The position numbers and the translations under genes are program-made. Under the pieces are notes generated by a model. It saw only the letters and a list, made by a program, of their open reading frames with translations. It was not told the DNA's origin and searched no databases. Shown here piece after piece: positions 1 to 64,000 of a stretch of 64,000 bases of DNA; position 1 is the stretch's first letter, and every line of letters starts with the position of its first letter. The DNA is from Mantamonas sphyraenae STR306. Its lineage: Eukaryota; Protista; CRuMs. The stretch is from contig JAPMXV010000034.1 of assembly GCA_026936335.1 (NCBI GenBank), positions 124,001 through 188,000 of the forward strand, written 5' to 3'.

Positions 1-21
1 CAGTCCTCCGCCGTCACGTAC

Positions 22-132
22 GCGCTCGTTGCATTCCATGCATCGCTTGTTCCCTTCGTATTTCAGCAGACTGCGGATCGTTGCCACTTGTTTGTCCACC
101 TTTTTGGGTTTCTTCAACGTGTTGCGCGACAT
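22..132 (-). CDS. ArfGAP-domain protein (AGFG/Hrb-like), first exon; gene continues off the window
   Basis: ATG at 132 gives MSRNTLKKPKKVDKQVATIRSLLKYEGNKRCMECNER, then a GTACGT donor. N-x-x-C-x-x-C is the start of an ArfGAP zinc finger. Confidence 0.7.
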
Positions 133-413
133 CTGCGTGTGTTTTGGGGTGTCAGTTCTTCTCTCCTTGCATCCGCGCCGGCATCCCACTCGATGAGTCC
201 ACCACTTGTTTGACACAGTATGCCACATCTATGCATGAACCCACATTGTCCTTTAGTTTTGTTGGTTTGTGCGGGGCGGGGTTCATTTCATTCCATCTTC
301 GTTTCGACCGACTCCCCACACCCCCTTCGGGCCCCTTCCAATTCCCACTCGTTCCAAATGACACACTCCGTGCATTTGCTTTGTGTGCTTCCGAGTCTGT
401 GTGTGCACAATGA

Positions 414-1410
414 CTACATCCCAAGTTTACCCAGACTGTGCATCCTCTCCTGCCCGATCTTGGACACGGCCGCTGCCATGTGCTCAAACATGCTTTGGCA
501 TCCATCCGACGCCAGTTTTACCACTTGCTCAAAGTTGTCTGTGTGCAGTTTGGCGTCCATTTGCAACGCCATGATTTTGCCCGACTGCGGCAAGATCGCA
601 AGGGTCAGGTCAGCGCCCCCCGCGGAGGCCTCGACGTAATTCAAATCTGCAGGTGTGTGGTTGTGTGCACGAAAGAGAGAGAGAGTGTGTGTGTGAGTGT
701 GTGAGAGAGAGTGTGTGTGTCCAGCATTGTGTGTGGTGTGCGTCGCCACACTGGAGGCGGCTCTGGCGCGTCGATACCGTTACAGCACACACTGCCTTTC
801 ACCTACCAAGCAACGCATTCCCGTCCACATAACCTGCGCTGCACGCACAAACAAAATCGTTCATGGGCACACCTGCGTCCACCAGCGCCAGCGTAGCTGC
901 GTTGATAGCTGCGCTGCGAAGTGACCCGTCCGACTGCAACACCTGGACGTAGATGTCGATCTGGCTGCGTGGAAACAGCTCTGTCTGGATGACGCCCTCA
1001 AACGTTTGCTTGATTACAGACGACATCTCCTGTGCTTTCCTGTGGCGTGTGCACAGGCACCGCGTGAGCAAAGCGGCCTCTTCGTATGTTCTTCCGCAGC
1101 CCGCAGCCCGCAGCCGCAGACACCCCCCTTACCTGTTGTTCTTGCTGCTTGCTTTGCGTTGCGCCGTGCTAAACGCAGCCGTACTGTACTGGCACGTGAT
1201 TACAGCACGCTCATGCGAGCTCTTTGCACGTTGCTTGAGCTCTCGAGGTCCGTGCACCACAGCAATCACCCTGCTGTTGCCCAACTGGAAGTATGCCGAG
1301 CCATCTGCTCGCTGAAACGGCGACAGCACACAGCGCACCTTGCGCAGCTCTCCTGCACGCCGGCCGTCCAACCGCAAGCCCTCGGGCGACACGAACTCAC
1401 TTCGCGACAT
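414..1410 (-). CDS. EXOSC4: Exosome subunit RRP41 (RNase PH-like), 3 exons
   Basis: EGLRLDGRRAGELR, ADGSAYFQLGNSRVIAVVHGPRE, FPRSQIDIYVQVLQSDG, INAATLALVDAGVPM, DLNYVE. Introns at ~1132-1042 and ~806-647. Confidence 0.95.
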
Positions 1411-1611
1411 GAAAAATCTCGAGGCGGCGTTTGGTCTGGTCTGCTTTGCGCAAATCTTCGTCCTGCAGGTTGAACAAGACACAGCACACTCTTGTTCAGC
1501 CACGATACTTCTCTTGTGTCCCAAGACGATCTCTGCTCGTGCAAATCACCCGTTTTGTTTTGCTCCCGTCTTCCTTCCCAAGCCTCTCTCCTCCCCAATT
1601 CGTCCACCAGA

Positions 1612-4599: not shown

Positions 4600-5788
4600 T
4601 CAGTCAAATGTCGCCTCCAGATCCGCATCAATGCTCACTTTGCACACAGGACACTCCTTGCGGCCCTGTGTCAGCCAGTGGTCGATGCAGTCGACGTGGA
4701 ACTGGTGATAGCACGGCAGCAGGCGCAACTTGTCTCCGTCTTCAAACTCTTCCAGGCAAATGCTGCACTGCTTGCTTGCCTGTTTCTTGCCTCCATCGTA
4801 CTCAAGCACAGGCAGGGCTTCCACTTCGAATTGCTGTGCCCGTTCGTGCGATCTATCGATGTTTTCGTCCAACGCCAACAGGGCTTCGTAATCGCCGCGG
4901 TAAAGTCCCCTGAGCGTTGCTGTAGCTGCTGAAGCATAGCATTGGCGGAGTTGTGTTGTGGTTGTGGTTGTGGTTGTGGTTGTGGTTGTGCTGGGTCTGA
5001 ATCAACTGGGCCACGTTCTGCTCCATCTGCTGCATCCGCCTCATTCGACTCTCCAGCAGCTCGGAGAACGCTGTGTCTCCGAATCCGTCCGCTTGCAACA
5101 GACTGTTCATGTGTGCAATGTACTCGTCGCGTGAGTCGAACCCGCCAGTGCGCCTGCCAGTGGATCGTCTCCTCTGTGTCCCTGTGTTCCCTGACCCAGC
5201 TGGTGATGCATCGCATGAAAGCGTGAGTGGTGTGAGCATGCGTAACGCCGTCCTTTCGGCCGCCTCCTTCAGGCCTCTCCCTCTCCCTCTTTCCAGCAAC
5301 ACACCTCGTCCGCTTTGCTGTCTCTGCCTCCTTGCGTCCTCCTCCTCCTGCATAGCCCTGGCCACAGCCTCGTCCTGCGCCAACCTCTCCTCTTCCTCCA
5401 ACAAGCGAGCAAGTGCTTCGTCGGTGTCCATCATGTCCTGACCGGGTTCCGAGTTTTCCGCCGCGTCTTCTTCTTCGCCCGCGTTTGCGGCCGTGTTTGT
5501 CGTAGTCGTGGTCGTGGTCGTCCTCCTCGTCCCTCTCATGGCTCCGTGATTGATCAAGGGCATGCGTGAGGTTGCTGGTGCAGGTTGCTCTGGTGCGTCA
5601 AACCACTCGCTGTCATCATCGTCTTCACTGGACGACGGTGTGTCCAGGCCGTCCGTCGGCCCAGGTGGAGGCGCTCCCAGGTTGGATGCATCCACCTGCA
5701 GCTGACTTGCCACCCTTTCGTCCCTTTCCATCTGCGCAATCTGTTCCAGCACCTGCTGCAGTGCCAAGTCCTCCTCTTGCAGGTCCAT
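4600..5788 (-). CDS. RING-H2 E3 ubiquitin ligase with UIM-like helices (2 apparent frameshifts)
   Basis: [12 protein letters not shown] and [12 protein letters not shown]; [10 protein letters not shown]; CSICLEEF...[16 protein letters not shown]...CPVC. Intron ~5306-5199; single-base gaps at ~4954 and ~4894. Confidence 0.9.
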
Positions 5789-5843
5789 TTGGCTGTGTGC
5801 GGTTTGCGTTTCCGCTTCCAGCGCATCTCTCGAACATCAGATT

Positions 5844-6406
5844 ATGGACATTGGTACGCAGCATACACGACACACAGCCACGCCCACGCATATACTCATA
5901 CACTACGTCACACCATACTGACCCCGGATGTTGCAGAAGTGGCCTCTGGCAGCGACAAAGAGCGGGCCGTGCAGCGGATGCTGGCAAGCTCAAGTTCCGC
6001 CAGCAGCAGCGGCAGCAGCAGCAGCTCTTCACCCACCAAACCCATTCCCAAGCCAAATATCTACAAAGTGGGCACCAGTGACGTGCTTTCCCGCGTCCAG
6101 GCCTTTATGCCCACCATGGAAGCGGCCAACAAGGCGCTGGACGACGTCCTGGAGTCCGGCCAGTTTGACGCAGAGGTGTTTAATGTCAACCACATCGAGG
6201 AAGATGATGAACAGGTGGTGGAGGTGGACCTCGGTTTGGGCGTGTTCACCGAGAAGGAGTCTCTCGACGAGGCGGAGCTCGAGTTGCACGAACAGGCCCG
6301 TCAGCAGGACGAGGAACAGTATGAGAAGGACAAGAAGGATATGGACGAAAGGCACGGACAGAGTGACAAAGCAAACAAGGACAGTATGCTCATCCAGGAG
6401 CTGTGA
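5844..6406 (+). CDS. NOPCHAP1: NOP58 chaperone NOPCHAP1 / C12orf45 (DUF4598)
   Basis: MDI then an intron, then SDVLSRVQAFMPTMEAANKAL...FNVNHIEEDDEQVVEVDLGLGVF, the DUF4598 signature. Confidence 0.8.
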
Positions 6407-6500
6407 GGCGCGACCGCCAAGGCAAAACAAACACACCAGCAACACACACATGGTCATCCCCTTGCGCGGCTCCATCCGCCGTTGCACCTTCCGTGCGTCT

Positions 6501-8252
6501 ATGCCCGGTCTCCTCCTCTTGTTGGCTCTGGCAATCGTGGACTGCCAGCTCATAGGAGCCGAGGCCGCCAAGCCACCGCGTTCCCCCAACTTTGTCGTCC
6601 TGCTTGCAGACGACCTCGGCTACGGTGACCTCAGCTGCTATGGCAATGAAAGCATCCACACACCGAACCTGGACCGTCTGGCTGCAGAGGGCGCGCGTTT
6701 CACACACTTTCTGTCGCCTGCGCCGGTGTGTTCTCCCTCCCGCTCGGGACTGATGACAGGACGGTACCCCGTGCGTGCTGGGATGGTCTCCAGTGTCCAA
6801 AACTTCCGCACCATCAACTCACCGGCCATTGCAGGGGGTCTGCCGCGCTCGGCACAAACCTTTGCCGAGTATCTCAAGGAGCATGCGTACGACACAGGCA
6901 TGTTTGGCAAGTGGCACCTGGGCATCCACGAAGGCACCAACGGCACCCAAGACTACAACCTTATCCCGTCCCGGCGCGGCTTTGACACCTTTTACGGCAT
7001 GCCCGTCACCAACGTGCAGACCTGTGACCCCAACCGCACCGTCTACGTCCAATCCTCCCTCTTTGTCTACTTCCTGTCCCGCACTTCCCACGTTTGGTAC
7101 TCCCTTGCCGCCGTCATTGTCCTGGCTCGGGTCCTGGGGCTCGTGGGCAATCGCTCCACCTTTTTGCTCGCCCTGCTCCTGAGCGTCATTGTCTACGGCG
7201 CCTACTTTTACACAGCCAACTACTTTCTGCTTTCTCGAAGTGCATGCATCCTCATGCGCAACGATCGCATCGTGCAGCAGCCGGTGCGACTGCAGAACCT
7301 GACTCGCAACCTGGCTCGCGAGGCCACCCAGTGGATTGGCCAGCACAAGGACAAGCCCTTCCTCCTGTACCTGCCCTTTGTCAAGGTTCACACCGCCCTC
7401 TTCACCACACGCGAGTTTGAGGGCCACTCTCGCGCGGGCTCCTTTGGCGACAACGTCGAAGAGATGGACTGGGCTGTGGGACAGGTCATGGATGCCCTCA
7501 AGCAGCATGGCCTCGACGAAAACACTCTTGTGTTCTTCTCCTCGGACAACGGACCCTTCCTGGAACGCGGACACGAGGCTGGCACAAGCGGAGTGTTCCC
7601 TGCGACCGACGGCTCCCTGCACCGCCTGCGCGGTGGAAAGGCACAGAACTGGGAAGGAGGCATCCGTGTGCCAGGCATTGTGCGCTGGAAGGGACGCATT
7701 GCGGCAGGACAGGTCATCCACCAGGCCAGCACACTTATGGATGTCTTCCCCACCATCGTCGACCTCATCCAGTCTGCAGAAGGGCCAGTGGCCACCGAGC
7801 CCATGCTTCGGCATGACGGGCGCTCTCTCATGCCTCTGCTCACGGGGAAACTGCCGGCAGACGAGCTCCTGCACGACGTCCTGTTCCACTATTGCGGAGA
7901 TGTGATCTCTGCCGCCAGGGTTGGCCACATCAAGGTGCATTTTAGCACACCCGTGTGGGAGGATGACTCTCAGTCGTGTCCATCAGCCACCATCTGCTCG
8001 TGTGCAGGCAGTGCTGTTGTCCAGCACGACCCTCCTCTGGTGTTTGATCTCCGTAAGGACCCTTCCGAGAGCACGCCCCTCAACCCAGCCGACCATGCTC
8101 CCATCCTCGCCACCATCCACAAGGCACTGCGCGAACATCGCCAGTCCATCCAGCCCGTGCCCAATCAGCTCGAACGCTTCGCTCGTCCCTGGTTGTTTCC
8201 CTGCTGCAACGAGCAGTGCGAGTGTGACCTCGAGCCACAAGATCAAGCGTGA
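6501..8252 (+). CDS. Steryl-sulfatase-like arylsulfatase with signal peptide and transmembrane hairpin
   Basis: Signal peptide MPGLLLLLALAIV; PNFVVLLADDLGYGD; CSPSR formylglycine motif; GKWHLG; KVHTAL; SSDNG; WEGGIRVP; two hydrophobic helices. Intronless; alternative ATG at 6450. Confidence 0.92.
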   Translation: MPGLLLLLALAIVDCQLIGAEAAKPPRSPNFVVLLADDLGYGDLSCYGNESIHTPNLDRLAAEGARFTHFLSPAPVCSPSRSGLMTGRYPVRAGMVSSVQNFRTINSPAIAGGLPRSAQTFAEYLKEHAYDTGMFGKWHLGIHEGTNGTQDYNLIPSRRGFDTFYGMPVTNVQTCDPNRTVYVQSSLFVYFLSRTSHVWYSLAAVIVLARVLGLVGNRSTFLLALLLSVIVYGAYFYTANYFLLSRSACILMRNDRIVQQPVRLQNLTRNLAREATQWIGQHKDKPFLLYLPFVKVHTALFTTREFEGHSRAGSFGDNVEEMDWAVGQVMDALKQHGLDENTLVFFSSDNGPFLERGHEAGTSGVFPATDGSLHRLRGGKAQNWEGGIRVPGIVRWKGRIAAGQVIHQASTLMDVFPTIVDLIQSAEGPVATEPMLRHDGRSLMPLLTGKLPADELLHDVLFHYCGDVISAARVGHIKVHFSTPVWEDDSQSCPSATICSCAGSAVVQHDPPLVFDLRKDPSESTPLNPADHAPILATIHKALREHRQSIQPVPNQLERFARPWLFPCCNEQCECDLEPQDQA

Positions 8253-8401
8253 GTGATGTTGAGTCTTCTTTCGACATCAATGAGAATGCACATGACAATG
8301 ATCCGGTCACAAGTTGTGAGTGCGCACACACACTCTCTCTCTCTCTCTCTCCACGGCGCACGCATCCTTCATTTCCCTGCAACAAATCTCAACAGTGCAG
8401 C

Positions 8402-9715
8402 TCACCACTCCTCGTCACTGCTGAACCCATCCTCCCTGCCTTCCTCGTCCTCATCCGAAGCGTACAACTCTTGCTGCTGTTGCCTGTTCCACTTCCGAAT
8501 GGCTCCATCGTGCTGCATCTCATTCACCATCTGCTTCACCTCCATTTGCGTGTGCAGCCTGTCGCGTCGCATCGACGAGCTTGCCGATCCCTCGTCCGCC
8601 GTCCCTGCCCCATCTGTCCACAACCGCCTCACGTGGCCCTCTGTGTTCTTGCTCACCTTGTTCACATACATGTCCAGGCCCTTTTCGTTCTCCACCTCCC
8701 GCAAGATCTCTGGGCTGTCCGCCTCACCCCCGTTGAGCGGCGTCAGCAGGCCTGCAAAGCCCCGACGCAGCTCCTCCATCTCCTCCACCGCCACCTGCGG
8801 ACTCTCATCCAGTAGCAGAGCATCGTCTCTGTTCAGGAACACCATTGATCCGCTGCTCTTCTGCTTGTACGGTGTGGTGTCAAACACGTCGTCGCCGTGA
8901 TCTTCCTCCGCCTTCCGCAGCAGCTCACGCAGCTGTCGCTTCCGTTTCGCCGTCCCTGCTCCAGCCAATGGCGACATTCCTTCCCTTCCCCCCTTCTTCC
9001 TGCGCTTGCTGGTGTGTCGTCGCCCACCAACCCCCTGCGCATCCTCCCCGCCGTCCTGCTCGATCTCCTCCTCCTCTTCCTCTCCCAATCCCTCCTGTGC
9101 AGCCGTCTCTGCCGCACTCTTCTTTGTTGTCTTTCGTGTGCGCTTTTTCACGGCCTTGCGCTGCTTCGGTGTGCGTTGCAGGTTCTGAAACTGCATGCAG
9201 CACTCGTCGGCCGTGCGATCCGGAACAAGCGCAGCCACACGGTGCCAGAACCCGACACTCGTAGGATCCACAGACGCATGTGCCACAAACAACAGTTCCA
9301 ATTCGTCGTCTGCCCACACATCTCGCTTGCCGCGGCCCCGTTTGCGAGTCCCTGCGTTTGCGCGCCCTTTTGCCAACGGCTTTTTCGCCGGCGGCGTCGA
9401 TTCCAATTCTTGTCCCTCGGCCACCAGGTCCAGCTTCATCTTCTTGCGCTTGCCCTTGCCCTTTGCCTTTTTCCCCTTGCCTGCTGCCGCCGATTTTCCA
9501 TTACCCTTGGCTGTGGTTTCTCCCTTGGACGTGTCCTTGGTCCCCTCTGCCTCGTCTGCCATCACTGCGTTGTCTCCTTGGTTTTCCTTGTCCGCCACCA
9601 CCGCTGTATTCTTCTTCCGGCCCCGTCGTCCACCACGCTTCGCCACAAACGTGGTTACAAACGATTCCACTGTTTGATTGCAGCTCTGCAGATCTACCTC
9701 TGCTTCTGTGCTCAT
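8402..9715 (-). CDS. MIS18BP1: SANT/Myb-domain protein resembling the C-terminal half of Mis18BP1/KNL2
   Basis: WADDELELL...GFWHRVAALVPDRTADEC (SANT), then GTAKRKRQLRELL...DDVFDTTP and SPEILREV...DMYV, matching the Mis18BP1 post-SANT motifs as I recall them. Confidence 0.7.
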   Translation of the reverse strand: MSTEAEVDLQSCNQTVESFVTTFVAKRGGRRGRKKNTAVVADKENQGDNAVMADEAEGTKDTSKGETTAKGNGKSAAAGKGKKAKGKGKRKKMKLDLVAEGQELESTPPAKKPLAKGRANAGTRKRGRGKRDVWADDELELLFVAHASVDPTSVGFWHRVAALVPDRTADECCMQFQNLQRTPKQRKAVKKRTRKTTKKSAAETAAQEGLGEEEEEEIEQDGGEDAQGVGGRRHTSKRRKKGGREGMSPLAGAGTAKRKRQLRELLRKAEEDHGDDVFDTTPYKQKSSGSMVFLNRDDALLLDESPQVAVEEMEELRRGFAGLLTPLNGGEADSPEILREVENEKGLDMYVNKVSKNTEGHVRRLWTDGAGTADEGSASSSMRRDRLHTQMEVKQMVNEMQHDGAIRKWNRQQQQELYASDEDEEGREDGFSSDEEW

Positions 9716-9910
9716 GGGACGTGTCGTGCACCTGGTTTTGCTTTTTCTTGCCACCGCTGCGCAGCCATTCACACATTCCCCCAAACACACACGCTTCCAT
9801 GTACATACGACCCATGTGAGCATGGTGTGATCTGTACAATGGCCTCAACCTTCCCGCCAAAGAATCCTCCCTCCGTTGCGCTGCGGGCGACATCCAAACC
9901 CGCACACACC

Positions 9911-15273: not shown

Positions 15274-17398
<2,125 letters not shown>

Positions 17399-17477
17399 GC
17401 ATGAACGTGAATTGAATAGGGGCGTCTCCATTTGCTTTCGCTTTCAAGGTTACAGCGCCTGCAGAAGTGCAGCGCAT

Positions 17478-21335: not shown

Positions 21336-21346
21336 ATTGTGTTTGT

Positions 21347-23465
<2,119 letters not shown>

Positions 23466-38011: not shown

Positions 38012-38045
<34 letters not shown>

Positions 38046-42723: not shown

Positions 42724-45899
<3,176 letters not shown>

Positions 45900-46487: not shown

Positions 46488-47498
46488 ATGATCAAGTACC
46501 GCAAGATCGAGAAAATCGGGGAGGGGGCCTATGGCGTGGTGTACAAAGCCAAGTGTGTGCAGTCGGACGAGGTGGTGGCGCTGAAGAAGATCCGGTTGGA
46601 CACCAACGACGAAGACGGCGTGCCGTCGACAGCCATCCGCGAGGTGGCGCTGCTGAAGGAGCTGCAGCACCAAAACGTGGTCGGTCTCCGCGACGTCATC
46701 CACAACGAGAACAAGCTGTACCTTGTGTTTGAGCATCTGGATCAGGACCTGAAGCAGTACATGGACAAGACGTCCAGCATCCCCAGCGCAACCGTCAAGG
46801 TAGGGAGGAGCGATGATCAGGAACCGCAAAATGCCACCGAAAACCCGCAAACACAACGGACGCACATGCTCACATGACCCCACGCACACACACGTGGTAC
46901 CCCACCCCGCCACCCGCTCTCTCCAACACAGCGCTTCCTCTTTCAATTATTGCGAGGTGTGGCCTTTTGCCACAGCCACCGCGTGCTGCATCGGGACCTT
47001 AAGCCCCAAAACCTTCTGATCAACGAAGACGGTACGCTGAAGCTGGCTGACTTTGGCCTGGCGCGCGCTTTTGGCATCCCTGTGCGCACATACACGCATG
47101 AGGTGGTGACGCTGTGGTATCGAGCGCCAGAGGTGTTGCTGGGCTCCAAACACTACTCCACAGCGCTGGACGTGTGGTCCATCGGCTGCATCTTTGCAGA
47201 GATGGTCAGGCGCACTCCTCTTTTCTCTGGCGACAGCGAGATTGACCAGCTGTTTCGCATCTTCCGCACTCTGGGCACTCCTAACGAAGACGTATGGCCG
47301 GGTGTCACCAAGCTGCCTGACTTTAACCAGGACTATCCCAACTTCCGGCCCCAGTCCCTTTCCAAAACCGTGTCCGACCTCGATGATACGGGCATCGACC
47401 TTCTCCAGTCTATGCTTGTCTACGAGCCGCGCAAGCGCATTTCCGCCAAGCGGGCTTTGCTCCACCCCTACTTTGACGACATCCGCGACGAAGAGTGA
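46488..47498 (+). CDS. Cyclin-dependent kinase, CDK1/2 (PSTAIRE) class, 2 coding exons
   Basis: [65 protein letters not shown]. Intron 46800-~46931. Confidence 0.96.
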
Positions 47499-47546: not shown

Positions 47547-48783
47547 CACACGTTGACGTTCATTCAATTCAGGCAGCCTTCTGTGCCTCCTTGGCCAGAA
47601 GCTTGTTGCGCTTCACGTTGTGCTTCTTGGCGAAGCGCAGGTTGCGCAGGAACTTCGGGTCCATCCCCTTCAGCGGGGTCTGGCGCTTGCGCTGCGGCTT
47701 CTTGATGCCGTTGCGGTGCGCCTTGTACGTCTGGTTATGAGCCGTGTGGTTCTTGGACTTGGCCATCCTTGATCTGTTCCGTCAGTCGCCACACAAGCGT
47801 ACACGTCAACCACCAAATCGTGTGTCAGTGTTCCACCCCTCCCAATCACACTCATCCCCACACATGCATACACACACACACACACACCAGCACAGGCTCT
47901 GGGAAACACGCCACAACCCCCGCTTCCAAACACGCCCAGCCGATTCCCGTCCCAGCCCCCATCCTCCTTTGTCCACCCTTTCCGTCTTCCCATGCCACCC
48001 CTCCTCCCTGGAACGCGACCCCCCACACCGGCCCATCCACCCCCTCTGTCCCATCCACCTCTTCCTCCCCCCACGCCACCCACCCGACCGCCAAAAAGCT
48101 CGGCCCCGCCCATGCAACGCCCCAAATTCCTCCTCTCCCGTTCCTTTCCCCGCCCCTTTTCCCCTTTCACTCCCCTCCACACCCTTACTCTCACACCCCA
48201 TCCTCTTCTCCATCCACCCCTCTTTCCCACACATCCCTCCACAACCACTCCCTGCTTTCCAATCCCCCGCAAACCCGTCCTCCTTTCCCTTTCTCTCTCG
48301 CTCCCCCTCCACCTTTGCCCCGTTCCACCCAAAACCCTCTCCCCATCCTTCACTCTCGCCTGCCCATCATCCACCACACCACCCATTCCCCTCCCATCCT
48401 CCTTTTCCCTGTTCTCCCCCATCCGTTTCCTCCTATCCTCCTCTCTACCCTCCCACATCCTCCGCCAAAGTCCACCCCTCTCGCATGCATCACCCGCAAA
48501 ACCCGTCATCCGCCGCCCAGAATCCACCTCCACCACCGCCCACCATCACATCCACACGCACATTCCAACCACATCTCCATGCACACACATTCACACATCC
48601 CCTCTCTTTATCCTTGCTCTCATCTTGCAACCTACGAGTGGTGTTTTCGCTGTCTGCACACTCGCACTCCTCCCTGCACACCACATTCACATCTGTGCTT
48701 CTCTGTCACCCTCCCGTCTCTCCGGGGGACATGGCTCCCTCACTCCAACCCTCCCATTCACAGAGTCAACCAGTGGTTTCATT
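47547..48783. repeat. Copy 1 of a ~1.24-kb direct duplication (RPL29 plus C-rich upstream tract)
   Basis: Near-identical to 54148-55395. CDS identical; scattered SNVs and indels in the non-coding part. Confidence 0.97.
47569..47766 (-). CDS. RPL29: 60S ribosomal protein L29 (eL29), copy 1
   Basis: [24 protein letters not shown]...[19 protein letters not shown]. Confidence 0.98.
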
Positions 48784-54147: not shown

Positions 54148-55395
54148 CACACGTTGACGTTCATTCAATTCAGGCAGCCTTCTGTGCCTCCTTGGCCAGA
54201 AGCTTGTTGCGCTTCACGTTGTGCTTCTTGGCGAAGCGCAGGTTGCGCAGGAACTTCGGGTCCATCCCCTTCAGCGGGGTCTGGCGCTTGCGCTGCGGCT
54301 TCTTGATGCCGTTGCGGTGCGCCTTGTACGTCTGGTTATGAGCCGTGTGGTTCTTGGACTTGGCCATCCTTGATCTGTTCCGTCAGTCGCCACACAAGCG
54401 TACACGTCAACCACCAAATCGTGTGTCAGTGTTCCACCCCTCCCAATCACACTCATCCCCACACATGCACACACACACACACACACACACACAGCACAGG
54501 CTCAGGGAAACACGCCACAACCCCCGCTTCCAAATTCCAAACACGCCCAACCGATTCCCGTCCCAGCCCCCATCCTCCTTTGTCCACCCTTTCCGTCTTC
54601 CCATGCCACCCCTCCTCCCTGGAACGCGACCCCCCACACCGGCCCATCCACCCCCTCTGTCCCATCCACCTCTTCCTCCCCCCACGCCACCCACCCGACC
54701 GCCAAAAAGCTCGGCCCCGCCCATGCAACGCCCCAAATTCCTCCTCTCCCGTTCCTTTCCCCGCCCCTTTTCCCCTTTCACTCCCCTCCACACCCTTACT
54801 CACACACCCCATCCTCTTCTCCATCCACCCCTCTTTCCCACACATCCCTCCACAACCACTCCCTGCTTTCCAATCCCCCGCAAACCCGTCCTCCCTTCCC
54901 TTTCTCTCTCGCTCCCCCTCCACCTTTGCCCCGTTCACCCAAAACCCTCTCCCCATCCTTCACTCTCGCCTGCCCATCATCCACCACACCACCCATTCCC
55001 CTCCCATCCTCCTTTTCCCTGCTCTCCCCCATCCGTTTCCTCCTATCCTCCTCTCTACCCTCCCACATCCTCCGCCAAAGTCCACCCCTCTCGCATGCAT
55101 CACCCGCAAAACCCGTCATCCGCCTCCCAGAATCCACCTCCACCACCGCCCACCATCACATCCACACGCACATTCCAACCACTTCTCCATGCACACACAT
55201 TCACACATCCCCTCTCTTTATCCTTGCTCTCATCTTGCAACCTACGAGTGGTGTTTTCGCTGTCTGCACACTCGCACTCCTCCCTGCACACCACATTCAC
55301 ATCTGTGCTTCTCTGTCACCCTCCCGTCTCCCCGGGGGACATGGCTCCCTCACAAGCCAACCCTCCCATTCACAGAGTCAACCAGTGGTTTCATT
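54148..55395. repeat. Copy 2 of the ~1.24-kb direct duplication
   Basis: Runs CACACGTTGACG...CAGTGGTTTCATT, shared with 47547-48783. Confidence 0.97.
54170..54367 (-). CDS. RPL29: 60S ribosomal protein L29 (eL29), copy 2
   Basis: Identical translation to copy 1. Confidence 0.98.
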
Positions 55396-55433
55396 TGAAC
55401 AATCCGTCGCCGCCCGTGCGGCAACGGACGCGC

Positions 55434-56315
55434 TCACGTGAACTGCTTGCCTGAACAGGGCCCACCTTCGCTAAAGTGGCCGCTGTCGTAGCGACCGTTG
55501 CACAGCCAGCAAAACTCAAACTTGCAGTTGCGGCAGGTCATGTGGTTGCACCCGCCGTTCTTTTCAATGTTCGCCTTGCACTTGGGACACGTCTTGGTGT
55601 TCTCCTGGGCCCACTTCTTCCACAGGTCGTCTTCGTTGTCGTTGAGCTCCTTCCACTCGGCGTACTGCGCACATGTGAGGTCGTTGTGCCACTCGACGTC
55701 GCATTTGGAACAAAACGCGTACTCGCAGGCGTCGCACACGGCCATGGGGTTGCCTGGGCGCAGTCCCATCGCATTGCCACATCCCTTTGTGCACCACACA
55801 ATCGATGCGTCCTTGTCGATGGTTCGGTTGAGCAGGAAGCGCTCGTAGCGAGCAAATGTTTCCTCCTCGCTGACCTGCTTCACCTCGTCGTACGTCAGCA
55901 CCTGCTTGCAGTTTGAACTGGGGCACTCAATGTCCACCTGGCCCTCCTCCACCATCACGCGTACGTTTTCGCGCACACAGTCCAGACAGAATTTGTGGTA
56001 GCAGCCGTCGATGATGTACAGCTCCTCCACAGTCAGGTCGTCCATGCACACGCTGCACTCGTACGTCTTTTCCTGCAGCGCCTTTTCACGTTCCAGTCGT
56101 TCCCTCTCCAACATCTGCTTGACCACAAGCTCGTCTTGCTTGGCCTGAATCGCTCGTTCGCGCATCTCCTTTTCCTCCATCTCCAGCATCTTGATGTACG
56201 AGTCGGTCAGCTCTCGGATGCGCTGTTCCTCCTCCTGCTTGGTCAGCAGCTTCTTGACCTTGTCCACATCCTCGATGCTCCGCTGCGTCTGAAGGCGGCC
56301 GCCGCCATTCCCGCC

Positions 56316-56360
<45 letters not shown>

Positions 56361-56888
56361 TGTGGTGGTGTTCCCGTTCCCCGTGTTGCTGCTACCTTCC
56401 GTTCCCCCCGAAGAGTCTTTGGTGTGGTTTCCGCCGCCTGCAGTGGTGGTGGTGGTCGTCGTCGTCGTTTGTGGTGTTTGCGTTCCGTCCTGATTTGTGT
56501 TGACCACAGGCTCCTCCAGCAAGATGGCAATGACTGCTTCTGTATCCATGTTGTGCTGTTTCAACAGCACAGTCGCGCGCTGGTCGTCAATGTCGCCCAG
56601 CAAAGCTGTGATTTGGCTGAGGGCTGACGCGAGGGTCGCTTGGAACTCGGCGCTCTCCTCGTCGGTATCTCCGTTGTTTGCGCCCACGTTGCCTGTGTCC
56701 TTCTCGTCGTTTGTCTGTGTCCCAGCGTTGTCTGAGTCCCCTTGGAGCAGAGTGTTGATGGCGGCCTCCTGGTCGATGCCGTTTTCCCTCAGGATGCGAA
56801 TGACCTTGTCGTGGTCCACATCTCCCAGCAGGTCTTCGATGGCGCTGGCCACAGTCATGAGCTGCATCTGCTCCTCGTTGTTGCTCAT
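55434..56888 (-). CDS. RBR (RING-IBR-RING) E3 ubiquitin ligase with two N-terminal CUE-like domains
   Basis: Two repeats of LLGD.D....LL......EA.I..LL; RING1 CSVC..CYHKFCLDC; IBR; RING2 CPKCKANIEKNGGCNHMTC..C..FCWLC. Confidence 0.93.
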
Positions 56889-57081
56889 GATTGCAATGTT
56901 GAGACGAGCAGACGTGGACGTGTGAGGTGATTGTGCTGCGATGGGGTGCGCGGCAAACAAGGGTCTCACACGAGTGAATGCACAGGAGAAGCATTGAAGC
57001 ATGGGGGTTGGGGAATTCCCAGAGTGCAACCTGCGCGTGGACAACCAATCGATCCCAGGGCGAGAGAGAGAGAGAAAAAGG

Positions 57082-57937
57082 ATGCAAAACGCGGATGGGC
57101 CTGTGCGTGGCACAGAGATCCGCTCTGGCTTCCTGGACAAAAAGGGAGAGGTGAACAAGTCGTGGAAGACGCGCTGGTTTGTACTGGCGGCGAAGCAGCT
57201 GTGGTATTACCGCAAGTCCGACGCACCCAAGCCCATTTCCAGCATCGAGCTTGAGGACACTACCATCCGGGTAGGTGGAAGGGCGGCGAGAGGAGGCCGA
57301 AGGCCGAAGGGTGTGGGTTGTTGTGTCGTAGACTGACACGCGAGTGGGCAACGTGCAGCCATGCGAGGAGGCGTTTGACGAGTACGACTTTGCGTTTGAG
57401 ATTGTGACGCGAGGCAGGATTTACCAGCTGGCGGCGAGCTCGGCCGAGGAGATGCGCAACTGGATGCGCGATCTGTCGCAACAGACAATCCACAATCTGG
57501 AGAACAAAATCATGGTGGATGCGGAGATGCTCATTATGAAGGTGGAGCGGGAACACCGTTTTTTGTCGACGCCCGAAGCAAACGCGCGGCGGACGCTGGT
57601 AATGGAGGCGGGAGACGAGGAGAGCGAGACAGAAACGCAGGGCAAGGATGTGGAGGAGGGAGACGAAGGGGAGGAGGGAGACGGGGAGGAAGAGGCCGGT
57701 GTGGATGCAAGCGGGAGGCAAAAGAGGGGCGGGTCGGTGTTCAACGACGTGAAGTTTGACCTGCCGCACATGGGCGGGTCGCTCGCACCTGTGTCGGGGA
57801 CAATGCAAGGCGCAGGAAGCAGCACGGGCAGTCAGGACAGTGACGATGGAGGCGCCAAGAACCCCAAATTCTCGCGTCTGAAGAAGGCCATTCGGTCGTC
57901 GAGCTTCAAGCGTTTGACCAAGGGCCAAACACCGTGA
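57082..57937 (+). CDS. PH-domain protein, 2 exons
   Basis: RSGFLDKKGEVNKSWKTRWFVL...FAFEIVTRGRIYQLAASSAEEMRNWM. Confidence 0.88.
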
Positions 57938-58010
57938 GCGGGGCGGAATGGGAGGGATATATGGGCCGAAGGGTAGAGATGCTTGCGAAAAGGAGGTATG
58001 CGTGAATGTA

Positions 58011-59416
58011 ATGTATGTTGAAGAACGCGACGAGGCGGCAAACGAAAAAGGCAGAGCCGAGAAGAGAGAGATGCCTGCGCTGTGTGTGGTGGGCAACCAG
58101 AGTAGCGGAAAGACACAGGTGATTGGGGTGTTGAAGCAGTTGGTGGCGGGCGATCAGACAGGAGCAAGCGCAAGCATGGGATTGGGGCTGGACTACCACA
58201 GCGTGCAGGCGAGGGGCAAAGAGTACGAGTTGTGGGAAGTGCAAGGGGACACGCAACTGCTGCCGTTGATGGACCTAACGAGTGTGGGTCAGCAACAAGG
58301 AGAGGACGGGAAGCAAGGCAAGGCCGGATTGGACATGATCCTGATTGTGCTGGACTGGAGCCAGCCCAGGACGCTGCTGAGCAGCCTGAAAAAGTGGCTG
58401 GGTGGGCTGGACGAGGTGGAAGCGGCCAAGAACGTGCCGGTGATGGTACTGGTGAACAAAAGCGACACAATGGGGACGTTTACGTCGCAATTTATGGAAG
58501 CAGACGCAGAGCGCAAGCTGCGCATTGTACAGCAGTGTTTGCGGCGCGAGTGTTTGGCGTGTAAGTTGTGTGATCAGGAAGCGGCGGGAAACGGGTGCAC
58601 GAGGCAAAGGGTGACGGCAGGCTGACACGGAAGTCGGACGGTGCAGACAACGCCGGATTGGCGTATGTGTCGTGTGAGACGAGAAAGAATGTGGAATGGG
58701 TGTGGCACTGGATTGAAGAGGCTTGCACAGAGAGGGCAGAGGAGAAGGAAACGACGGAAGGGGACAACGAGGAGGCGGAGGAGGAGGAGCGGTGGAGCAA
58801 CAGCTTGGATTCGGACAACATTTTGATCCGTGCAGGCAGCGACAAGAAGGAGTATGTGGATATCAGCGGGAGTCTGACGGAGCAGGAAGAGCGGTTTGAA
58901 GATGCGGTGGGGGAGATGGATGGAGACACGTCGCAAGGAGGAGGGAGCAGCAGCAGCGAAACAGAGGGTCAAGAGCAGCCTTTGTCGACGGAGGAACTGG
59001 AAGCGCAAGTAAGTGCTGCGTTTGAGGCGGCTCTGGCAAAGGCGGCGGAGGCAGGAGAGTACTCTGGGGCGACGTCGACGATGGATGCGCTGAACGAAAG
59101 TGCAGGGGCAACAGGTGGCGGCGGAAGCAGCAGCAGCAGCGGCGGGGGCAGCAACGGAGGGGAGTCTGGGGAGAAGGAAGGGAGTGCGGGAGGAGACAGT
59201 GCGGGTGGAGGGCTGGAGGCAAAGTGGGACAAGATGCGCAAGAAGAGGGTGGCCAAGGGAGATGCACGTGGAGCCAAGGCGCTCAAGGCGTCGGACATTG
59301 CCAATGGAGGGTCGCCACGACGAGGGCGGTCAGGGACAAAGAGCGCGCTGGCGGCGTTGCGAGCGAGCAGCAGTGGAGGAGGCGGAGGGAGCGATGACGG
59401 GAAGAAAACGGAATGA
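58011..59416 (+). CDS. Cytoplasmic dynein light intermediate chain (DLIC), divergent, 2 exons
   Basis: GNQSSGKT P-loop; GLGLDY; IVLDWSQP; VLVNKSD; VQQCLRRECLAYNAGLAYVS; NILIRAGSD. Confidence 0.75.
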
Positions 59417-59444
59417 GAGATTGATTCTGTGAGTGTAGTGTGGC

Positions 59445-60062
59445 TTAGTCGAAGGAGGTCTTGAGCACGTAGATGTTGTCGTTGTCGAGGGTGATGGAAA
59501 CCTGGGAGTTGTCGAATTGCACTGGAGTGGGGCATTTCGCGTGCACGCGTGAGCAGGCGATGCACAGGGCACGAGGGAGTGTACGGAGGAGTGGATGGCA
59601 CGAAGGTGATGTGACGCTTACCTGTCAAACGCGAGAACTTCTCGTCGTCCTTTTCGAGGCGTTGCAGGACGGCCTGGGTGTCCTGCAGGATGGCGGTGAC
59701 CAATGCGGGCAGGTTCTCTGCGCTGGCGCCCTCGTACTCGCCGGAGCTCTGTGCGTGGAGAGGACGGGTGAGGAAGAGCACGAGGGAGGGTAGTGTGCGA
59801 AGGAGGCACACCGTGGCAAAGGAAACGGTGCGTGAGTGCGTGGGGCAGGAGGACGGGAGGCAGCGAGGAGGAGCTCACCTTGACGATGGTGCCGTTCTCG
59901 CGGCTGACCACAGCCACACCCGTCTGGTTGTCTACTTCCTGCAGCGCGTCAAAGATGGCGTCGGACTGTGTCGGGGCGTGTGTTGTGGAGGGAGAGGCGG
60001 TTGGAGTGAGCCAGAGGTGTCCTTGCGGGAAAGGGGCAAAGGCGGAGCGAGGCACGGACCAT
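59445..60062 (-). CDS. LAMTOR4: Ragulator subunit LAMTOR4-like roadblock protein, 4 exons
   Basis: Spliced product M/SDAIFDALQEVDNQTGVAVVSRENGTIVK/SSGEYEG...FSRLT/VQFDNSQVSITLDNDNIYVLK matches the LAMTOR4 pattern. Confidence 0.75.
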
Positions 60063-60107
60063 TCGGATTGCTTTGTGTGCGTCTGCGCTTCCAACCGAGA
60101 GGGGGGA

Positions 60108-62837
60108 ATGGTGAGCTGGAGAAGGGGGGGGGGATGTGGAGGGTGCAGTGGCAGCAGATTGGCCTAGGAGGATGCACCCGTCATGGTGGCGTGCTGACAC
60201 AAAAGAGGCTGTGTGCGCACACAGGGAATCTCGGGACTGCTGAACGCCCTGAAGCCGGCCATCACGCCGCTGGAGCTGAAGAGCCTGAGCGGGCAGACGG
60301 TGGCGGTGGATGCGTCTGTGTGGCTGCACAAGTCGACGTACGGGTGTGCGTACGAGCTGGCCATCGGCCAATGGACGGACAAGTGGGTTTGAGAGCGGGA
60401 AGCAGAGCGGGAGTGATGGTGGTTTGTTGCTGACCGGCCGCTGTGGACGCACAGGCACATCAACTACTGCATGCGGCAAGTGGGGCTGCTGCAACACTAC
60501 AAGATCCGTCCGTACATTGTGTTTGACGGCGCGACGCTGCCAGCCAAGGCCGGGACGGAGGAGGAGCGACGGAGGTAGGTGGTTCTTGGGAAATGGCGCG
60601 AAAAGCGCGCGCTGTGCGACGCTGTCAAGGGGCCGACAGGTGGGGTGGGATGAGGCAGTGGTGGCACAGAGACAGGGCGACTGACACGGCACGGGCAATT
60701 GGATGGACCCAGGTCGCGTGAAAAGTACCACCGCATGGGGATGGAGTATGTGCGGGCCGGGAACAGGGCGGAGGCGACGCGGTGTTTCCAACGCTGCGCC
60801 AACGTGGATGCACACATGGCCTACGAGTTTATCAAGCGCCTCAGGGCAGAAAACGTGCCGTTTGTGGTTGCACCGTACGAGGCAGACGCACAGCTAGCGT
60901 ACCTGGCACGCAATGGACTGGTGGACGCAGTGATCACCGAGGACTCGGACATGATTGCGTTTGGGTGCTCGCGTGTGCTGTACAAACTGGACAAGTTTGG
61001 GGCGGCGCAGGAGTTTCGCCTGAAGCGGCTGCTGCAGGTGAGCGAGCCGCTGGATTTCAGGGAGTGGGACGGAGAGATGCTGCTGACGGCGTGCATCTTG
61101 TCAGGGTGCGACTACCTGCCTTCTATGAAGGGAATGGGCTTCATCACGGCGCACCAGGCTGTGCAACGCTACCGCAACCACGAACGACTGTTTGAGAATC
61201 TGCGGATGGGTCAAAAGACGGGCACAAAGGTTGTCAAGGGCAAACTGGCGCTGACGGAGGAGTATGCGCGTAACTTTCGTGTCGCATGGCTGACGTTTCA
61301 CTACCAGCGTGTGTATGATCCACGCACGCGCACGGTGGTTCACCTGACGCCTCTTCCGGAGGGGTTGGACGAGAGTGTGCTGGACGAGGGGATTCCTGCG
61401 GGGCTGCTAGCCGGGAGCAAAGGAGGTTCGGCATCATCGTCATCGTCGTCATCGTCATCGTCATCGTCAGGGATGGATGGTATGGACACGGAGGAGATTG
61501 GAGAGCGAAGCGCAGAGAAGTGGATGGACTTTGTGGGGCCTGCGCTGCCAGAGGAGATTGCACGGGGGGTGTGCGAAGGCAAGTTGCACCCGTACACACA
61601 TGCCGACCTGGAGAAGCACAGTGTGGAGCAGCGGAGGGGACTGGGTGCAGATGGTAAAGGGCGCGGTTGGAGCAGGCGGAACAAAGCGGGCAAGAAGAAT
61701 GGGGCGTTGCCGGAGCAGAAGCAAAAGATCTCGCGATTCCTGGTGAAGCGCGTGCGCGAAGGGACGCAGAAAAAGGTGGCTGGGGAAGCAAGCGAGGCGA
61801 TGGTGGCAGTGGGCAAGGCAAAGAGCAGTGCGGGTAGGGAGGATGGAGCGCAGACACAAAAGATGGTGGAGGAGATGGAACGCAGAAATAGGCGGGAGGA
61901 ACACAAGCGGGCGACAGATGAGTTGCTAGCCATGCTGAAACGGGACATTGGAGCGTCGTCGGCGGAGAAGGGCGGGAGGAAGAGGCGGAGCGAGGAAGAG
62001 GAGTTGGAGGAGCGGATGCTGGAGCAGGCACTGAAGCGAAGTCGAGTGGAAACGAGTGCGGCTGAGTGTTTGGTGGCCAGCAGCAGCTTGGAGGAAGAGG
62101 AGGAGGGGGAGGAGAAGGAAGCCAAGGGGACGCCGAAGAAATCAAGCACAAAGCGGAAGCAGCCACGGGCCAAGAGGGGGGCAAAGACAAAGGGTGTCCT
62201 GCGCACGCCGGTGAACAACAGAAACAATCATCGGCGTGTGATCAGCCAATACTTTGCGACGCCGCCGAGCTCGACCGCGAGTGAAACACCGGACAGTGGC
62301 AGCGGTACAAGCGGAGGGACGTCAACGACGACGAGCACGAGCACGATGACGATGACGGTGACGAGTGCACGCGCGACGCTGGCACAAAAGTTTGAGGCCA
62401 TGCTGGGGCCGCGTGCGTATGCAGGCAAGAAGGACGAGGGACTAGAGCGGTCAGCAAGCGAGACGAGCAGCGCAGGGAGCTCCAGCGCGTTTGCAGCGCC
62501 GGGAAAGCAGGTGTCGGGTGGGCACGGGAGCGGGGATGGGCAGACGCCGAATGTGCGGCCGTCCTCGAATCCGGATCTGAAACCGGCGCTGCTGGACCTA
62601 AGCAAGATGGAGTACAGGCGGTCGTCGTCGGTGACATCGATTTTTAGCTCGGGTGGGCGCTCGTCGTCGATGTCGAACCGGTCGATGGATGCGTTGGACG
62701 AGTCGCGGCCGAGCGAGGAGGAGGACGCGCAAGGATCGCAGTCTCACTCGCAACGCAGTGTGAGTGAAGTGCACGCATTGATGGCGAGCAGCACTGCACG
62801 TCGTAGCAAGCAGTTTTATGGGGAAGAGGAGGTGTAG
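60108..62837 (+). CDS. EXO1: Exonuclease 1 (XPG/Rad2 family), 4 exons
   Basis: M/GISGLL...VAVDASVWLHK; VFDGATLPAK; VAPYEADAQLAYL; ITEDSD; ILSGCDYL; FHYQRVYDP. Confidence 0.96.
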
Positions 62838-62907
62838 TGCGGCGAGGAGCACTGCACGTCGGGCAAGTGGTTTAATGGGGAAGAGGAGGTGTAGTGTGGC
62901 GAGCAGC
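62783..62907 (+). repeat. ~57-bp tandem duplication spanning the EXO1 stop codon
   Basis: Units 62783-62840 and 62841-62897 (GGCGAG.AGCACTGCACGTCG...GGGGAAGAGGAGGTGTAGTG), plus a partial third unit. Confidence 0.9.
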
Positions 62908-62947
62908 AGCAATGCAGCAGTGCGTGGATTCAACAATGTTTCATTTG

Positions 62948-63948
62948 TCATTGAGTCTCGTCGGCGTCGTCGCTCGGCTGTGTCTTTGCCTTCTTCTTGG
63001 TGGGGCGCACAAGGAGAAGGACCATGCCGCTGGAAAGCTGGGCAACGTCGTCGAGAGAGACCTCGTCTTCGTCGAGGACGTCGATAAACTGCTTCTTGCC
63101 GCGGAGGTTGAACTTGGCCGAGGCGAGGGAGAGGAGATCCCGGACAGAGTCTGGGCGTTCGTTCACACGCAGCAAGCGCTCCTTGGCCCCCTGGCCGTGG
63201 ATGCGCAGCTTAAAGTGCATCTGACCGCGACGATAGGATTCCTGTTCGCGAATAGGGTTGCGCTTGGCGGAGAACAGGGCCTTGCCGTTGACGTAGCGTG
63301 GCGTGGAAGCGGTTTCGGAGGTGGTGGACGTCTCTGGCACGTCGACGTCGACGACTTGTGCGTATTGGTCGTCGTTGCTGTACATGGATTGTGCGGTGGT
63401 CGGGGTGTGCTCGTCGTCGTGTTGCTCCTCTTCCTCCTCCTCCTCCTCCTCATCGTCATCGTCATCATCCTCGTACTCCTCCTCACGGGCAAAGTAGTCT
63501 GGGTTCTGATGGATGTAGCCTGTGCCGTAGCGCTCCTCGTATTCGCGGAGAGACTTGTTGCTGCTGAGGTTCTTGGCCTTGATCTTCCAATGGGCATCCT
63601 GGTTGAGCCTGAGGGCAACATTCTTGGGCAGAAACTGTTGTTCCTCACGCACGACGCGGTCCATCTCGCTCTCGTGGATGACCATTTGCAGAGTGCGGTC
63701 CGAGTACATCTCTTCGGCGAGATGGGTTGTGCCGTCGCTAAACATCAGCTGATGCTCCTGGTAGTTGAGGCTGGGGTTAGCCCAAATGCCTTCGTCGACA
63801 AGTTGGACGTCGGCGGCGGTGTCTGCGTCGTCGTTGTCGTACGGCTCGTGGGGCTGGGGCTGGGAGCCACTCTCGGCGGCCTCCATGGCAGCAATGGCGG
63901 CAAGGATTTCCTCTGGCACGTCTTCGCCAAAGTCTTGTTCAAAGATGT
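62948..63948 (-). CDS. Acidic protein with a C-terminal KHA/ubiquitin-like domain; 5' end probably outside the window
   Basis: PDSVRDLLSLASAKF...VLDEDEVSLDDVAQLSSGMVLLL resembles KHA. An acceptor CAG precedes DIFEQDF. Confidence 0.6.
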
Positions 63949-64000
63949 CTGCCGGTTGGTGGACATGTTGGCCGCTGGGCCCATTTCCTCTGCGCTGGGC

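What the first reader, a model, noticed from the sequence alone, without database searches (positions are those of the whole stretch)
1..64000. Sawtooth G/C strand skew, independent of gene direction, flipping G-to-C about every 8-13 kb (candidate dense fixed replication origins)
Seen: two 111-nt introns in + strand genes only 5 kb apart have opposite composition. DENND6 intron 38834-38944 has about 59 C and 12 G; KIF24 intron 43853-43963 has about 19 C and 54 G (hand counts). Across 57-64 kb the + strand stays G-rich through both + genes (PH, DLIC, EXO1) and - genes (LAMTOR4, KHA). Across 36.4-39.7 kb it stays C-rich through a - gene and a + gene. Third codon positions follow the same pattern. 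G-to-C flips by eye: ~15.3, ~23.4, ~36, ~46.85 (inside the CDK intron), ~54.2 kb and possibly ~4 kb, with mostly more gradual returns between them. Established: sawtooth skew arises from leading/lagging-strand mutation bias at fixed origins, and budding-yeast leading strands are C-rich. Inference: this genome may use unusually strong, closely spaced, sequence-fixed origins.
Basis: partly seen in the sequence, partly recalled or inferred. Interest (0 to 1): 0.8.

Follow-up and report, generated by a model that had tools for sequence, protein, structure and literature searches.

The report
Strand-locked G/C skew domains
For many kilobases at a time, one DNA strand of this protist chromosome is loaded with G (and A) and the other with C (and T), whichever way the genes point; this is probably an unusually strong footprint of replication direction, but the proposed regular saw-tooth of origins is not supported.

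Summary
The core observation is real and very strong. I analysed the window plus its flanks, 258 kb of contig C34. At silent sites, G/C skew follows the chromosome strand and not the gene strand. Third-position skew tracks nearby noncoding skew (r=0.75) but not gene strand (r=-0.12). Neighbouring genes on opposite strands share the same + strand skew (r=+0.59). In strong domains, 4-fold sites read G 57% / C 15% or the mirror image, which gives two codon dialects and shifts amino-acid use.

The saw-tooth shape and the 8-13 kb spacing are not supported. Sharp and gradual transitions occur in both directions, and there is no significant periodicity.

The contig starts at a telomere, and the first ~45 kb is uniformly C-rich on the + strand. 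If forks run outward at chromosome ends, the G-rich strand is the leading strand.

The genome matches Mantamonas sphyraenae, and I found no paper describing this skew. The scan noted the same pattern on many other pieces of this genome. Replication linkage is inferred, not shown.

The parts
5248..9874 (.). C-rich (+ strand) skew domain. Silent-site skew is -0.30. It contains genes on both strands.
   Evidence: Segmentation; exon table.
15274..17401 (-). Left arm of a 2.1-kb inverted duplication, 99-100% identical. It carries a PPP-family phosphatase gene on the - strand, and its introns and 3' UTR are C-rich on +.
   Evidence: the repeat finder I1/I2; self-BLAST at 99.06% over 2128 nt; Metallophos hits.
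21344..23465 (+). Right arm of the same inverted duplication. The phosphatase gene is on +, so the skew is mirrored (+0.29).
23371..26671 (.). C-rich domain, silent-site skew -0.27.
36049..40414 (.). C-rich domain (-0.26). It spans a - gene at 36576-37841 (S3+ -0.42) and a + gene at 38564-39634 (S3+ -0.43). The + gene holds the C-rich 111-nt intron at 38834-38944.
   Evidence: intron joint GT..AG in spliced contigs.
40417..46670 (.). G-rich domain (+0.17). It spans the - strand POT transporter gene (S3+ +0.20; its introns have +0.23 and +0.14 on the + strand) and the + strand kinesin gene (S3+ +0.20; intron 43853-43963 has +0.48).
   Evidence: Pfam.
47547..48783 (-). Copy 1 of a 1.24-kb direct duplication (98%). 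It holds ribosomal protein L29e on the - strand plus a putative ~854-nt 5' intron at about 47783-48636, with + strand skew -0.73.
   Evidence: The intron limits are read from splice-like signals only and were not confirmed by RNA.
54148..55395 (-). Copy 2 of the L29e-plus-intron duplication, + strand skew -0.77.
55200..57200 (.). C-to-G transition (-0.32 to +0.40), fitted width 1.5-2 kb, centred near 56.2 kb. It lies in the 5' half of the - strand RBR/IBR ligase gene, next to a divergent promoter near 57.2 kb. It is a candidate initiation zone if the G-rich strand is the leading strand.
56283..64000 (.). Start of a 19-kb G-rich domain. Silent-site skew is +0.40, rising to +0.66, and the domain runs on to contig position 199.2 kb. 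Genes on both strands share the + strand G excess.

Best explanation
A strong mutational asymmetry between the two DNA strands is fixed to the chromosome strand. It most likely follows the usual direction of replication forks, and it has driven silent sites towards about 56% G, 16% C, 17% A and 10% T on one strand and the complement on the other. Where fork direction is nearly constant, the skew is large and flat: the last ~45 kb before the telomere, and contig 180-199 kb, which includes window 56-64 kb. Where both directions are used, it is weak. Taking forks to run outward at chromosome ends, the G/A-rich strand is the leading strand. C-to-G transitions are then initiation zones and G-to-C transitions termination sites. 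Many sharp-edged small blocks sit on top of this pattern. They are not fork switches but recently duplicated or amplified DNA that brought its old skew with it. What is shown: strand-locking, independence from transcription, the telomere-adjacent polarity at one end, and the duplication-borne blocks. What is inferred: the link to replication and the leading-strand assignment.
For: Silent-site skew follows local noncoding skew and not gene strand. Opposite-strand neighbours share + strand skew. RNA-confirmed introns of + and - genes in one domain share polarity. Skew changes gradually from -0.47 to +0.14 along one 18-kb gene. The 4-fold composition of genes on the two strands is a mirror image, and weak domains look like an equal mix of the two. 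K-mer asymmetries reduce to single-base asymmetry, as expected of point mutation rather than the spread of a motif. The contig starts with CCCTAA repeats, followed by -0.41 and -0.37 over 0.3-38 kb. Both ends of contig C1 show the same polarity over about 1 kb. Unchecked first-stage notes report the same at other ends. Duplication-borne blocks were seen directly.
Against: There are no fork-direction or timing data. The profile lacks the N or saw-tooth shape expected from sharp origins and spread-out termination. Internal skew (+0.66) exceeds that of the terminal domain (-0.41), where fork direction should already be fully fixed, so fork bias alone does not set the amplitude. G co-varies with A, which differs from bacteria and human (G with T) and from yeast (C with A). 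The amplitude has no precedent that I know of for a nuclear genome. ORC2, OGG1, MutY, six MutS and four MutL homologues are all present, so no gene loss explains it. The polarity argument fails if origins sit next to telomeres.
Confidence: 0.5

Rival explanations
1. One reading: replication-linked skew with C-rich leading strands, as in budding yeast. The G-to-C flips would be dense, fixed origins, and chromosome ends would be replicated inward from origins next to the telomeres.
For: Yeast leading strands are A+C-rich (PMC3459929). Small G-to-C steps are over-represented at divergent promoters: 19 of 25. The flat terminal domain followed by a ramp fits either polarity.
Against: It needs an efficient origin within about 300 bp of the telomere (and, if the unchecked notes hold, at other ends too), which is unusual. 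There is no abrupt-versus-gradual asymmetry and no regular spacing. Four of the six flips cited are tied to duplications, three at an edge and one about 0.7-0.9 kb away.
Confidence: 0.17
2. A strand-locked but non-canonical process polarised from chromosome ends, such as frequent break-induced or recombination-dependent synthesis towards telomeres. Rearrangements would then spread skewed blocks through chromosome interiors.
For: The terminal domain is telomere-polarised. Duplications and family expansions demonstrably move skewed blocks. Both edges of blocks are sharp.
Against: Strong internal domains (contig 180-199 kb) consist of varied genes, none of which the 258-kb self-comparison found duplicated, on both strands, far from the end. 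No interstitial telomere repeats occur in the 258 kb. There is no direct evidence for such synthesis.
Confidence: 0.15
3. Transcription-linked skew (transcription-coupled repair, or R-loop-type G-rich sense strands near gene ends), with flips arising at convergent gene junctions.
For: Several window flips lie at convergent junctions. The putative L29e 5' intron is extremely G-rich on its sense strand. A small sense-strand component exists, with intercepts of -0.054 and +0.021.
Against: The strand coefficient is -0.024 against 0.87 for local skew. Opposite-strand neighbours correlate positively. Convergent junctions show no net step: mean +0.03, 17 up and 10 down. Skew changes sign along a single 18-kb gene.
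Confidence: 0.03
4. Selection or structure: for example, selection for G-quadruplex-forming or purine-rich strands, or spread of G-rich low-complexity repeats.
For: Introns and intergenic DNA contain G-run or C-run low-complexity sequence.
Against: The skew is strongest at 4-fold degenerate sites (0.51-0.59, against 0.40 in noncoding DNA), and k-mer asymmetry is explained by base frequencies alone.
Confidence: 0.03

Closest known systems
Bacterial replication GC skew (leading strand G>C, sign change at origin and terminus)
   Same: The skew is strand-locked and independent of gene direction. It is strong enough to give leading and lagging codon dialects and to shift amino-acid composition. Inverted or imported segments show up as local anomalies. 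Under outward forks at telomeres, the polarity (G on the leading strand) is also the same.
   Different: This is a linear nuclear chromosome of a eukaryote with many sign changes per chromosome. A co-varies with G here, rather than T. I found no gene co-orientation bias.
Human skew N-domains (upward jumps at origins, linear decline between them)
   Same: A nuclear, replication-type skew that is separable from the transcription-linked skew.
   Different: The human amplitude is far smaller, on my recollection. The N or saw-tooth shape is not found here. Domains here are 2-45 kb rather than about 1 Mb.
Replication skews in budding yeasts (S. cerevisiae, K. lactis, C. albicans; PMC3459929)
   Same: A compact genome, with skews detectable at third codon positions and in intergenic DNA around origins and some termini.
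   Different: Yeast skews are weak and only visible as averages over many origins, and the yeast leading strand is A+C-rich. Here single domains are obvious by eye, and the polarity inferred from the telomere is the opposite for G/C.
Animal mitochondrial strand asymmetry (skew that alters protein composition; PMC2779903)
   Same: Comparable skew magnitude at silent sites, with a visible effect on amino-acid usage.
   Different: That is an organellar genome with a special replication mode, not nuclear chromosomes.

Membership tests
Replication-associated compositional strand asymmetry | Departure from G=C at neutral sites that follows the chromosome strand and not the transcribed strand | tested here: met
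   strand calls checked by Pfam and by spliced contigs.
Replication-associated compositional strand asymmetry | Skew sign switches where fork direction switches (mapped origins and termini) | not testable with these tools
   No fork-direction or timing data. The only public runs found are held as contigs.
Replication-associated compositional strand asymmetry | Uniform polarity in the region beyond the last origin at chromosome ends | tested here: met
   C34 left end: -0.41 and -0.37 over 0.3-38 kb. Both C1 ends over about 1 kb. Other ends are covered only by unchecked notes, and I could fetch no more genome sequence.
Replication-associated compositional strand asymmetry | Saw-tooth or N-shaped profile: sharp at origins, gradual between them | tested here: not met
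   Increment skewness is non-significant. Sharp and broad transitions occur in both directions.
Replication-associated compositional strand asymmetry | GC and AT skews paired as in known systems (G with T, or C with A) | tested here: not met
   G pairs with A. At 4-fold sites the G-rich strand has A 0.15-0.19 against T 0.09-0.11, and pos3 GC versus AT skew gives r=0.44.
Transcription-associated skew | Skew sign follows the sense strand of genes | tested here: not met
   Strand coefficient -0.024; positive correlation between opposite-strand neighbours; no step at convergent junctions.
Sequence-defined point origins (yeast ARS type) | A shared sequence motif at the flip points | not tested
   Only about 6 sharp transitions of each direction were available in 258 kb, too few for motif discovery.
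Rearrangement-borne skew anomalies | Edges of discordant blocks coincide with duplication or amplification boundaries | tested here: met
   Inverted phosphatase pair and direct L29e pair; 4x 99% tandem repeat inside a gene; LRR-kinase block with at least 10 copies at 92-94% identity elsewhere.

The most novel reading that the evidence does not exclude
The nuclear chromosomes of this deep-branching eukaryote are replicated with almost deterministic fork direction over tens of kilobases, and they experience a strand-asymmetric mutation process several-fold stronger than in any nuclear genome described. Origins, termini and past rearrangements could then be read directly from the sequence of all ~66 chromosomes, and each gene's codon usage and protein composition would depend on which strand it lies on.
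Probability: 0.45. Interest if true: 0.85.

Novelty: new variant of a known kind. Interest (0 to 1): 0.72.

Why it matters
If the skew tracks replication, this genome would give a sequence-only map of fork direction in a lineage (CRuMs) near the base of Amorphea. No replication data exist for that lineage. The amplitude is large enough that single origins and termini could be located without averaging. That would make it possible to test how origin placement, termination and chromosome ends are organised on very small chromosomes. There are practical consequences too. Two codon dialects and strand-dependent amino-acid composition can mislead gene finders, expression proxies based on codon usage, and composition-sensitive phylogenomics that use Mantamonas proteins. 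The cause of such a strong purine/pyrimidine asymmetry, despite an apparently complete repair and licensing gene set, is itself an open question.

Tried and rejected
1. Saw-tooth asymmetry: the skewness of skew increments at 0.5-3 kb is non-significant, and step-versus-ramp fits give sharp and broad transitions in both directions.
2. Regular spacing: periodogram against AR(1) surrogates. Only a 10-kb bump at p~0.02-0.03 before correction.
3. Flips at convergent junctions: no net step there.
4. Context-specific mutational signature: k-mer asymmetries follow single-base frequencies, with obs/exp of 0.7-1.4.
5. Gene loss as the cause: OGG1, MutY, ORC2, six MutS and four MutL homologues are present.
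6. Polarised mutation spectrum from the 173-bp satellite: only 14 and 7 rare variants, too few to use.
7. Centromere reading of the satellite/tRNA foldback at contig 221-234 kb: weakened. First-stage notes report a second such island on the same contig and a TnpB/Fanzor-like gene in the core (unchecked).
8. Ancient telomere-to-telomere fusion at that G-to-C flip: no interstitial telomere repeats.
9. Introner family behind the three 111-nt introns: no similarity beyond the splice sites.
11. Literature: no paper links Mantamonas or Corallochytrium to skew. General searches returned only known bacterial, yeast, human and organelle cases.
Full report
WHERE THE WINDOW LIES. The window is G000:C34:124001-188000 in a genome of 25,061,354 bases in 78 contigs. 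C34 is 739,905 bp long. I fetched both flanks and assembled C34:1-258000. The contig begins with about 25 CCCTAA repeats and is therefore a true chromosome end. Contigs C1 and C2 carry telomere repeats at both ends, and C3 shows them at its start in the truncated listing. The size, contig number, 59% G+C and TTAGGG ends match the published Mantamonas sphyraenae assembly exactly: 25.06 Mb, 78 primary contigs, 59.19% GC, telomeres at both ends of 59 contigs, about 66 chromosomes (PMC10492846). That paper does not contain the word 'skew'. The identification is my inference from these figures, because run labels are coded.

CHECKING THE OBSERVATION. The hand counts for the two 111-nt introns are exact. 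Spliced contigs of run X3 skip exactly these intervals with GT..AG ends on the + strand. The same contigs show two - strand introns, at 41923-42033 and 42222-42378. Their + strand skew (+0.23 and +0.14) agrees with the G-rich + strand intron 5 kb away and with the surrounding domain. The window's skew in 1-kb windows ranges from -0.63 to +0.44.

To separate coding constraint from neutral composition, I trained a codon log-likelihood exon caller on the contig itself. It gave 217 segments covering 68% of the sequence. I tested 30 called segments against Pfam. Twenty-three had significant hits, all in the called frame and strand, and seven had none. At silent sites (noncoding plus codon position 3) the SD of skew over 2-kb bins is 0.278, against 0.038 expected from sampling.

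INDEPENDENCE FROM TRANSCRIPTION. Over 151 exons, third-position skew expressed on the + strand correlates with flanking noncoding skew (r=0.75, p=1e-28) and not with gene strand (r=-0.12, not significant). The regression gives 0.87 x local skew - 0.024 x strand. Genes of either strand follow the noncoding skew, with slopes of 0.80 and 0.65. Adjacent genes on opposite strands have positively correlated + strand skew (r=+0.59, p=3.6e-5, n=42). A sense-strand effect would make that correlation negative. Along one 18-kb + strand gene, third-position skew moves from -0.47 to +0.14.

In strong domains, 4-fold sites of genes whose sense strand is the G-rich strand read G .566, C .147, A .194, T .093. 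Genes on the other strand read C .559, G .183, T .146, A .112, which is the mirror image. Weak domains (G .366, C .338) look like an equal mix of the two. Amino-acid use shifts as the codon table predicts, with Glu, Gly and Lys up on G-rich sense strands, and Pro, Phe, Ile and Tyr up on C-rich ones. A small sense-strand component does exist, with intercepts of -0.054 and +0.021.

WHAT IS NOT CONFIRMED. The distribution of skew increments is symmetric at 0.5, 1, 2 and 3 kb, both in the window and in the whole contig. Step-versus-ramp fits give widths of 500 bp or less for three upward and three downward transitions, and 1.5-4 kb for others of both kinds. A periodogram shows only a 10-kb bump that does not survive multiple testing. 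Flips are not tied to convergent junctions: mean step +0.03, 17 up and 10 down. Divergent junctions show small downward steps in 19 of 25 cases.

DUPLICATIONS CREATE MANY OF THE SHARP FLIPS. The window holds a 2.1-kb inverted duplication, 15274-17401 versus 21344-23465, at 99-100% identity. Each arm carries a PPP-family phosphatase gene. It also holds a 1.24-kb direct duplication, 47547-48783 versus 54148-55395, at 98%. Each copy carries ribosomal protein L29e on the - strand plus a putative ~854-nt 5' intron with + strand skew of -0.73 and -0.77. The start of the second L29e copy is the 54.2-kb flip, and the first copy starts 0.7 kb after the 46.85-kb flip.

The same holds outside the window. 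A flip inside an open reading frame at contig 38.3-40.7 kb is a four-fold, 99% identical tandem repeat. A -0.55 block at contig 200.4-203.7 kb, embedded in a +0.4 to +0.66 region, ends exactly at the LRR/kinase domain border of one gene. That block has at least ten copies at 92-94% identity on contigs C25 and C2. Recently moved DNA therefore keeps the skew of its former context, as inverted segments do in bacteria.

THE UNDERLYING DOMAINS AND THE TELOMERE. After discounting these blocks, long domains remain that consist of varied genes on both strands, none of which the 258-kb self-comparison found duplicated. One covers contig 0.3-38 kb (-0.41 and -0.37) and continues to about 44 kb, then ramps to about +0.1 by 48.5 kb. 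Another covers contig 180.3-199.2 kb (+0.40 rising to +0.66) and includes window 56.3-64 kb.

At the left telomere the + strand, whose 5' end is the chromosome end, is the C-rich one. The G-rich strand therefore runs 5' to 3' towards the end, like the TTAGGG strand. Both ends of C1 show the same polarity over about 1 kb: -0.62 and -0.47 at the left end, +0.41 and +0.58 at the right. First-stage notes on other ends report the same, but I could not check them. A fork moving towards a chromosome end synthesises as its leading strand the strand that runs 5' to 3' towards that end. If terminal regions are replicated outward, as is usual, the G-rich strand is the leading strand. That polarity matches bacteria and human and is opposite to yeast (PMC3459929). 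Origins would then be C-to-G transitions. In the window these lie near 10-11, 26.7, 40.4 and 56.2 kb, the last being 1.5-2 kb wide and next to a divergent promoter. An efficient origin beside every telomere would reverse this reading. The sequence alone cannot exclude that, and I put outward forks at about 70%.

MECHANISM. K-mer asymmetries in noncoding DNA are accounted for by single-base frequencies, which points to point mutation and not to motif spread. G and A rise together on one strand. This purine/pyrimidine asymmetry suggests strand-biased transversions, or polymerase-specific errors. I tested for gene loss as a possible cause. OGG1, MutY, ORC2, six MutS and four MutL homologues are all present. 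The cause of the large amplitude therefore remains unexplained. It is also unexplained why an internal domain (+0.66) exceeds the terminal one (-0.41).

COMPARISON AND NOVELTY. The phenomenon belongs to the known class of strand compositional asymmetries. It behaves most like bacterial replication skew in strength and in its effects on codons and proteins. It occurs, however, on small linear nuclear chromosomes with many sign changes and with an unusual pairing of G with A. Searches of the paper library found nothing on skew in Mantamonas, and nothing comparable for a nuclear genome. The scan's own first-stage notes record the same pattern on many other pieces of this genome. I treat those as leads, not support.

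VERDICT. The skew domains and their independence from gene direction are real and striking. The saw-tooth shape, the regular 8-13 kb spacing and the assignment of origins to the G-to-C flips are not supported. Replication-fork linkage is the best explanation but remains an inference.

Noticed in passing
window 15274-17401 and 21344-23465: A 2.1-kb inverted duplication, 99-100% identical, with a 3.9-kb spacer. Each arm holds a complete-looking PPP-family phosphatase gene. This could be very recent, could be homogenised by gene conversion, or could be an assembly artefact.
   Followed up: partly
window 47547-48783 and 54148-55395: Two direct copies of the ribosomal protein L29e gene. Each has a putative ~850-nt 5' intron of extreme composition: 442 C against 70 G on the + strand, so G-rich in the transcript. 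They sit in an otherwise unskewed stretch.
   Followed up: partly
window 38834-38944, 41923-42033, 43853-43963: Three of the four RNA-confirmed introns in a 6-kb stretch are exactly 111 nt long, yet unrelated in sequence. This hints at a very narrow intron-length optimum.
   Followed up: partly
L025:3112-6661 and L026:4249-6280 (contig 221.1-234.3 kb): A 13-kb foldback. It has a 173-bp satellite (20.8 copies) and an inverted array (12 copies) that the genome search found only at this locus. Three tRNA-Val genes point inward around a 4.5-kb core. A first-stage note says the core encodes a TnpB/Fanzor-like protein, and another reports a similar island 380 kb further along the same contig.
   Followed up: partly
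L023:2380-5745 (contig 200.4-203.7 kb): This LRR-kinase gene belongs to a recently expanded family. At least 10 copies at 92-94% identity exist, including a tandem array with roughly 7.4-kb spacing on contig C25 and three copies on C2.
   Followed up: partly
L012:8214 to L013:762 (contig 38214-40762): A unit of about 640 nt is repeated four times at 99% identity inside an 18-kb gene built of filamin-like repeats.
   Followed up: partly
L025:1-960 (contig 218001-218960): A 102-bp tandem repeat, 9.4 copies at 98%, inside a 6.4-kb open reading frame. It produces a local skew peak of +0.6 to +0.77.
   Followed up: no
window 38500-44400: Contigs of runs X1 and X2 differ from the assembly, and from each other, at about 20 single bases in 5.9 kb. 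This is consistent with the heterozygous diploid state reported for this organism.
   Followed up: no
contig 17154-20149 (L010:7154-10000 and onward): A 3-kb island with skew +0.11 sits inside the -0.4 telomere-proximal domain. It has no close paralogue elsewhere (best match 79% over 354 nt), so it is not explained by recent duplication.
   Followed up: partly
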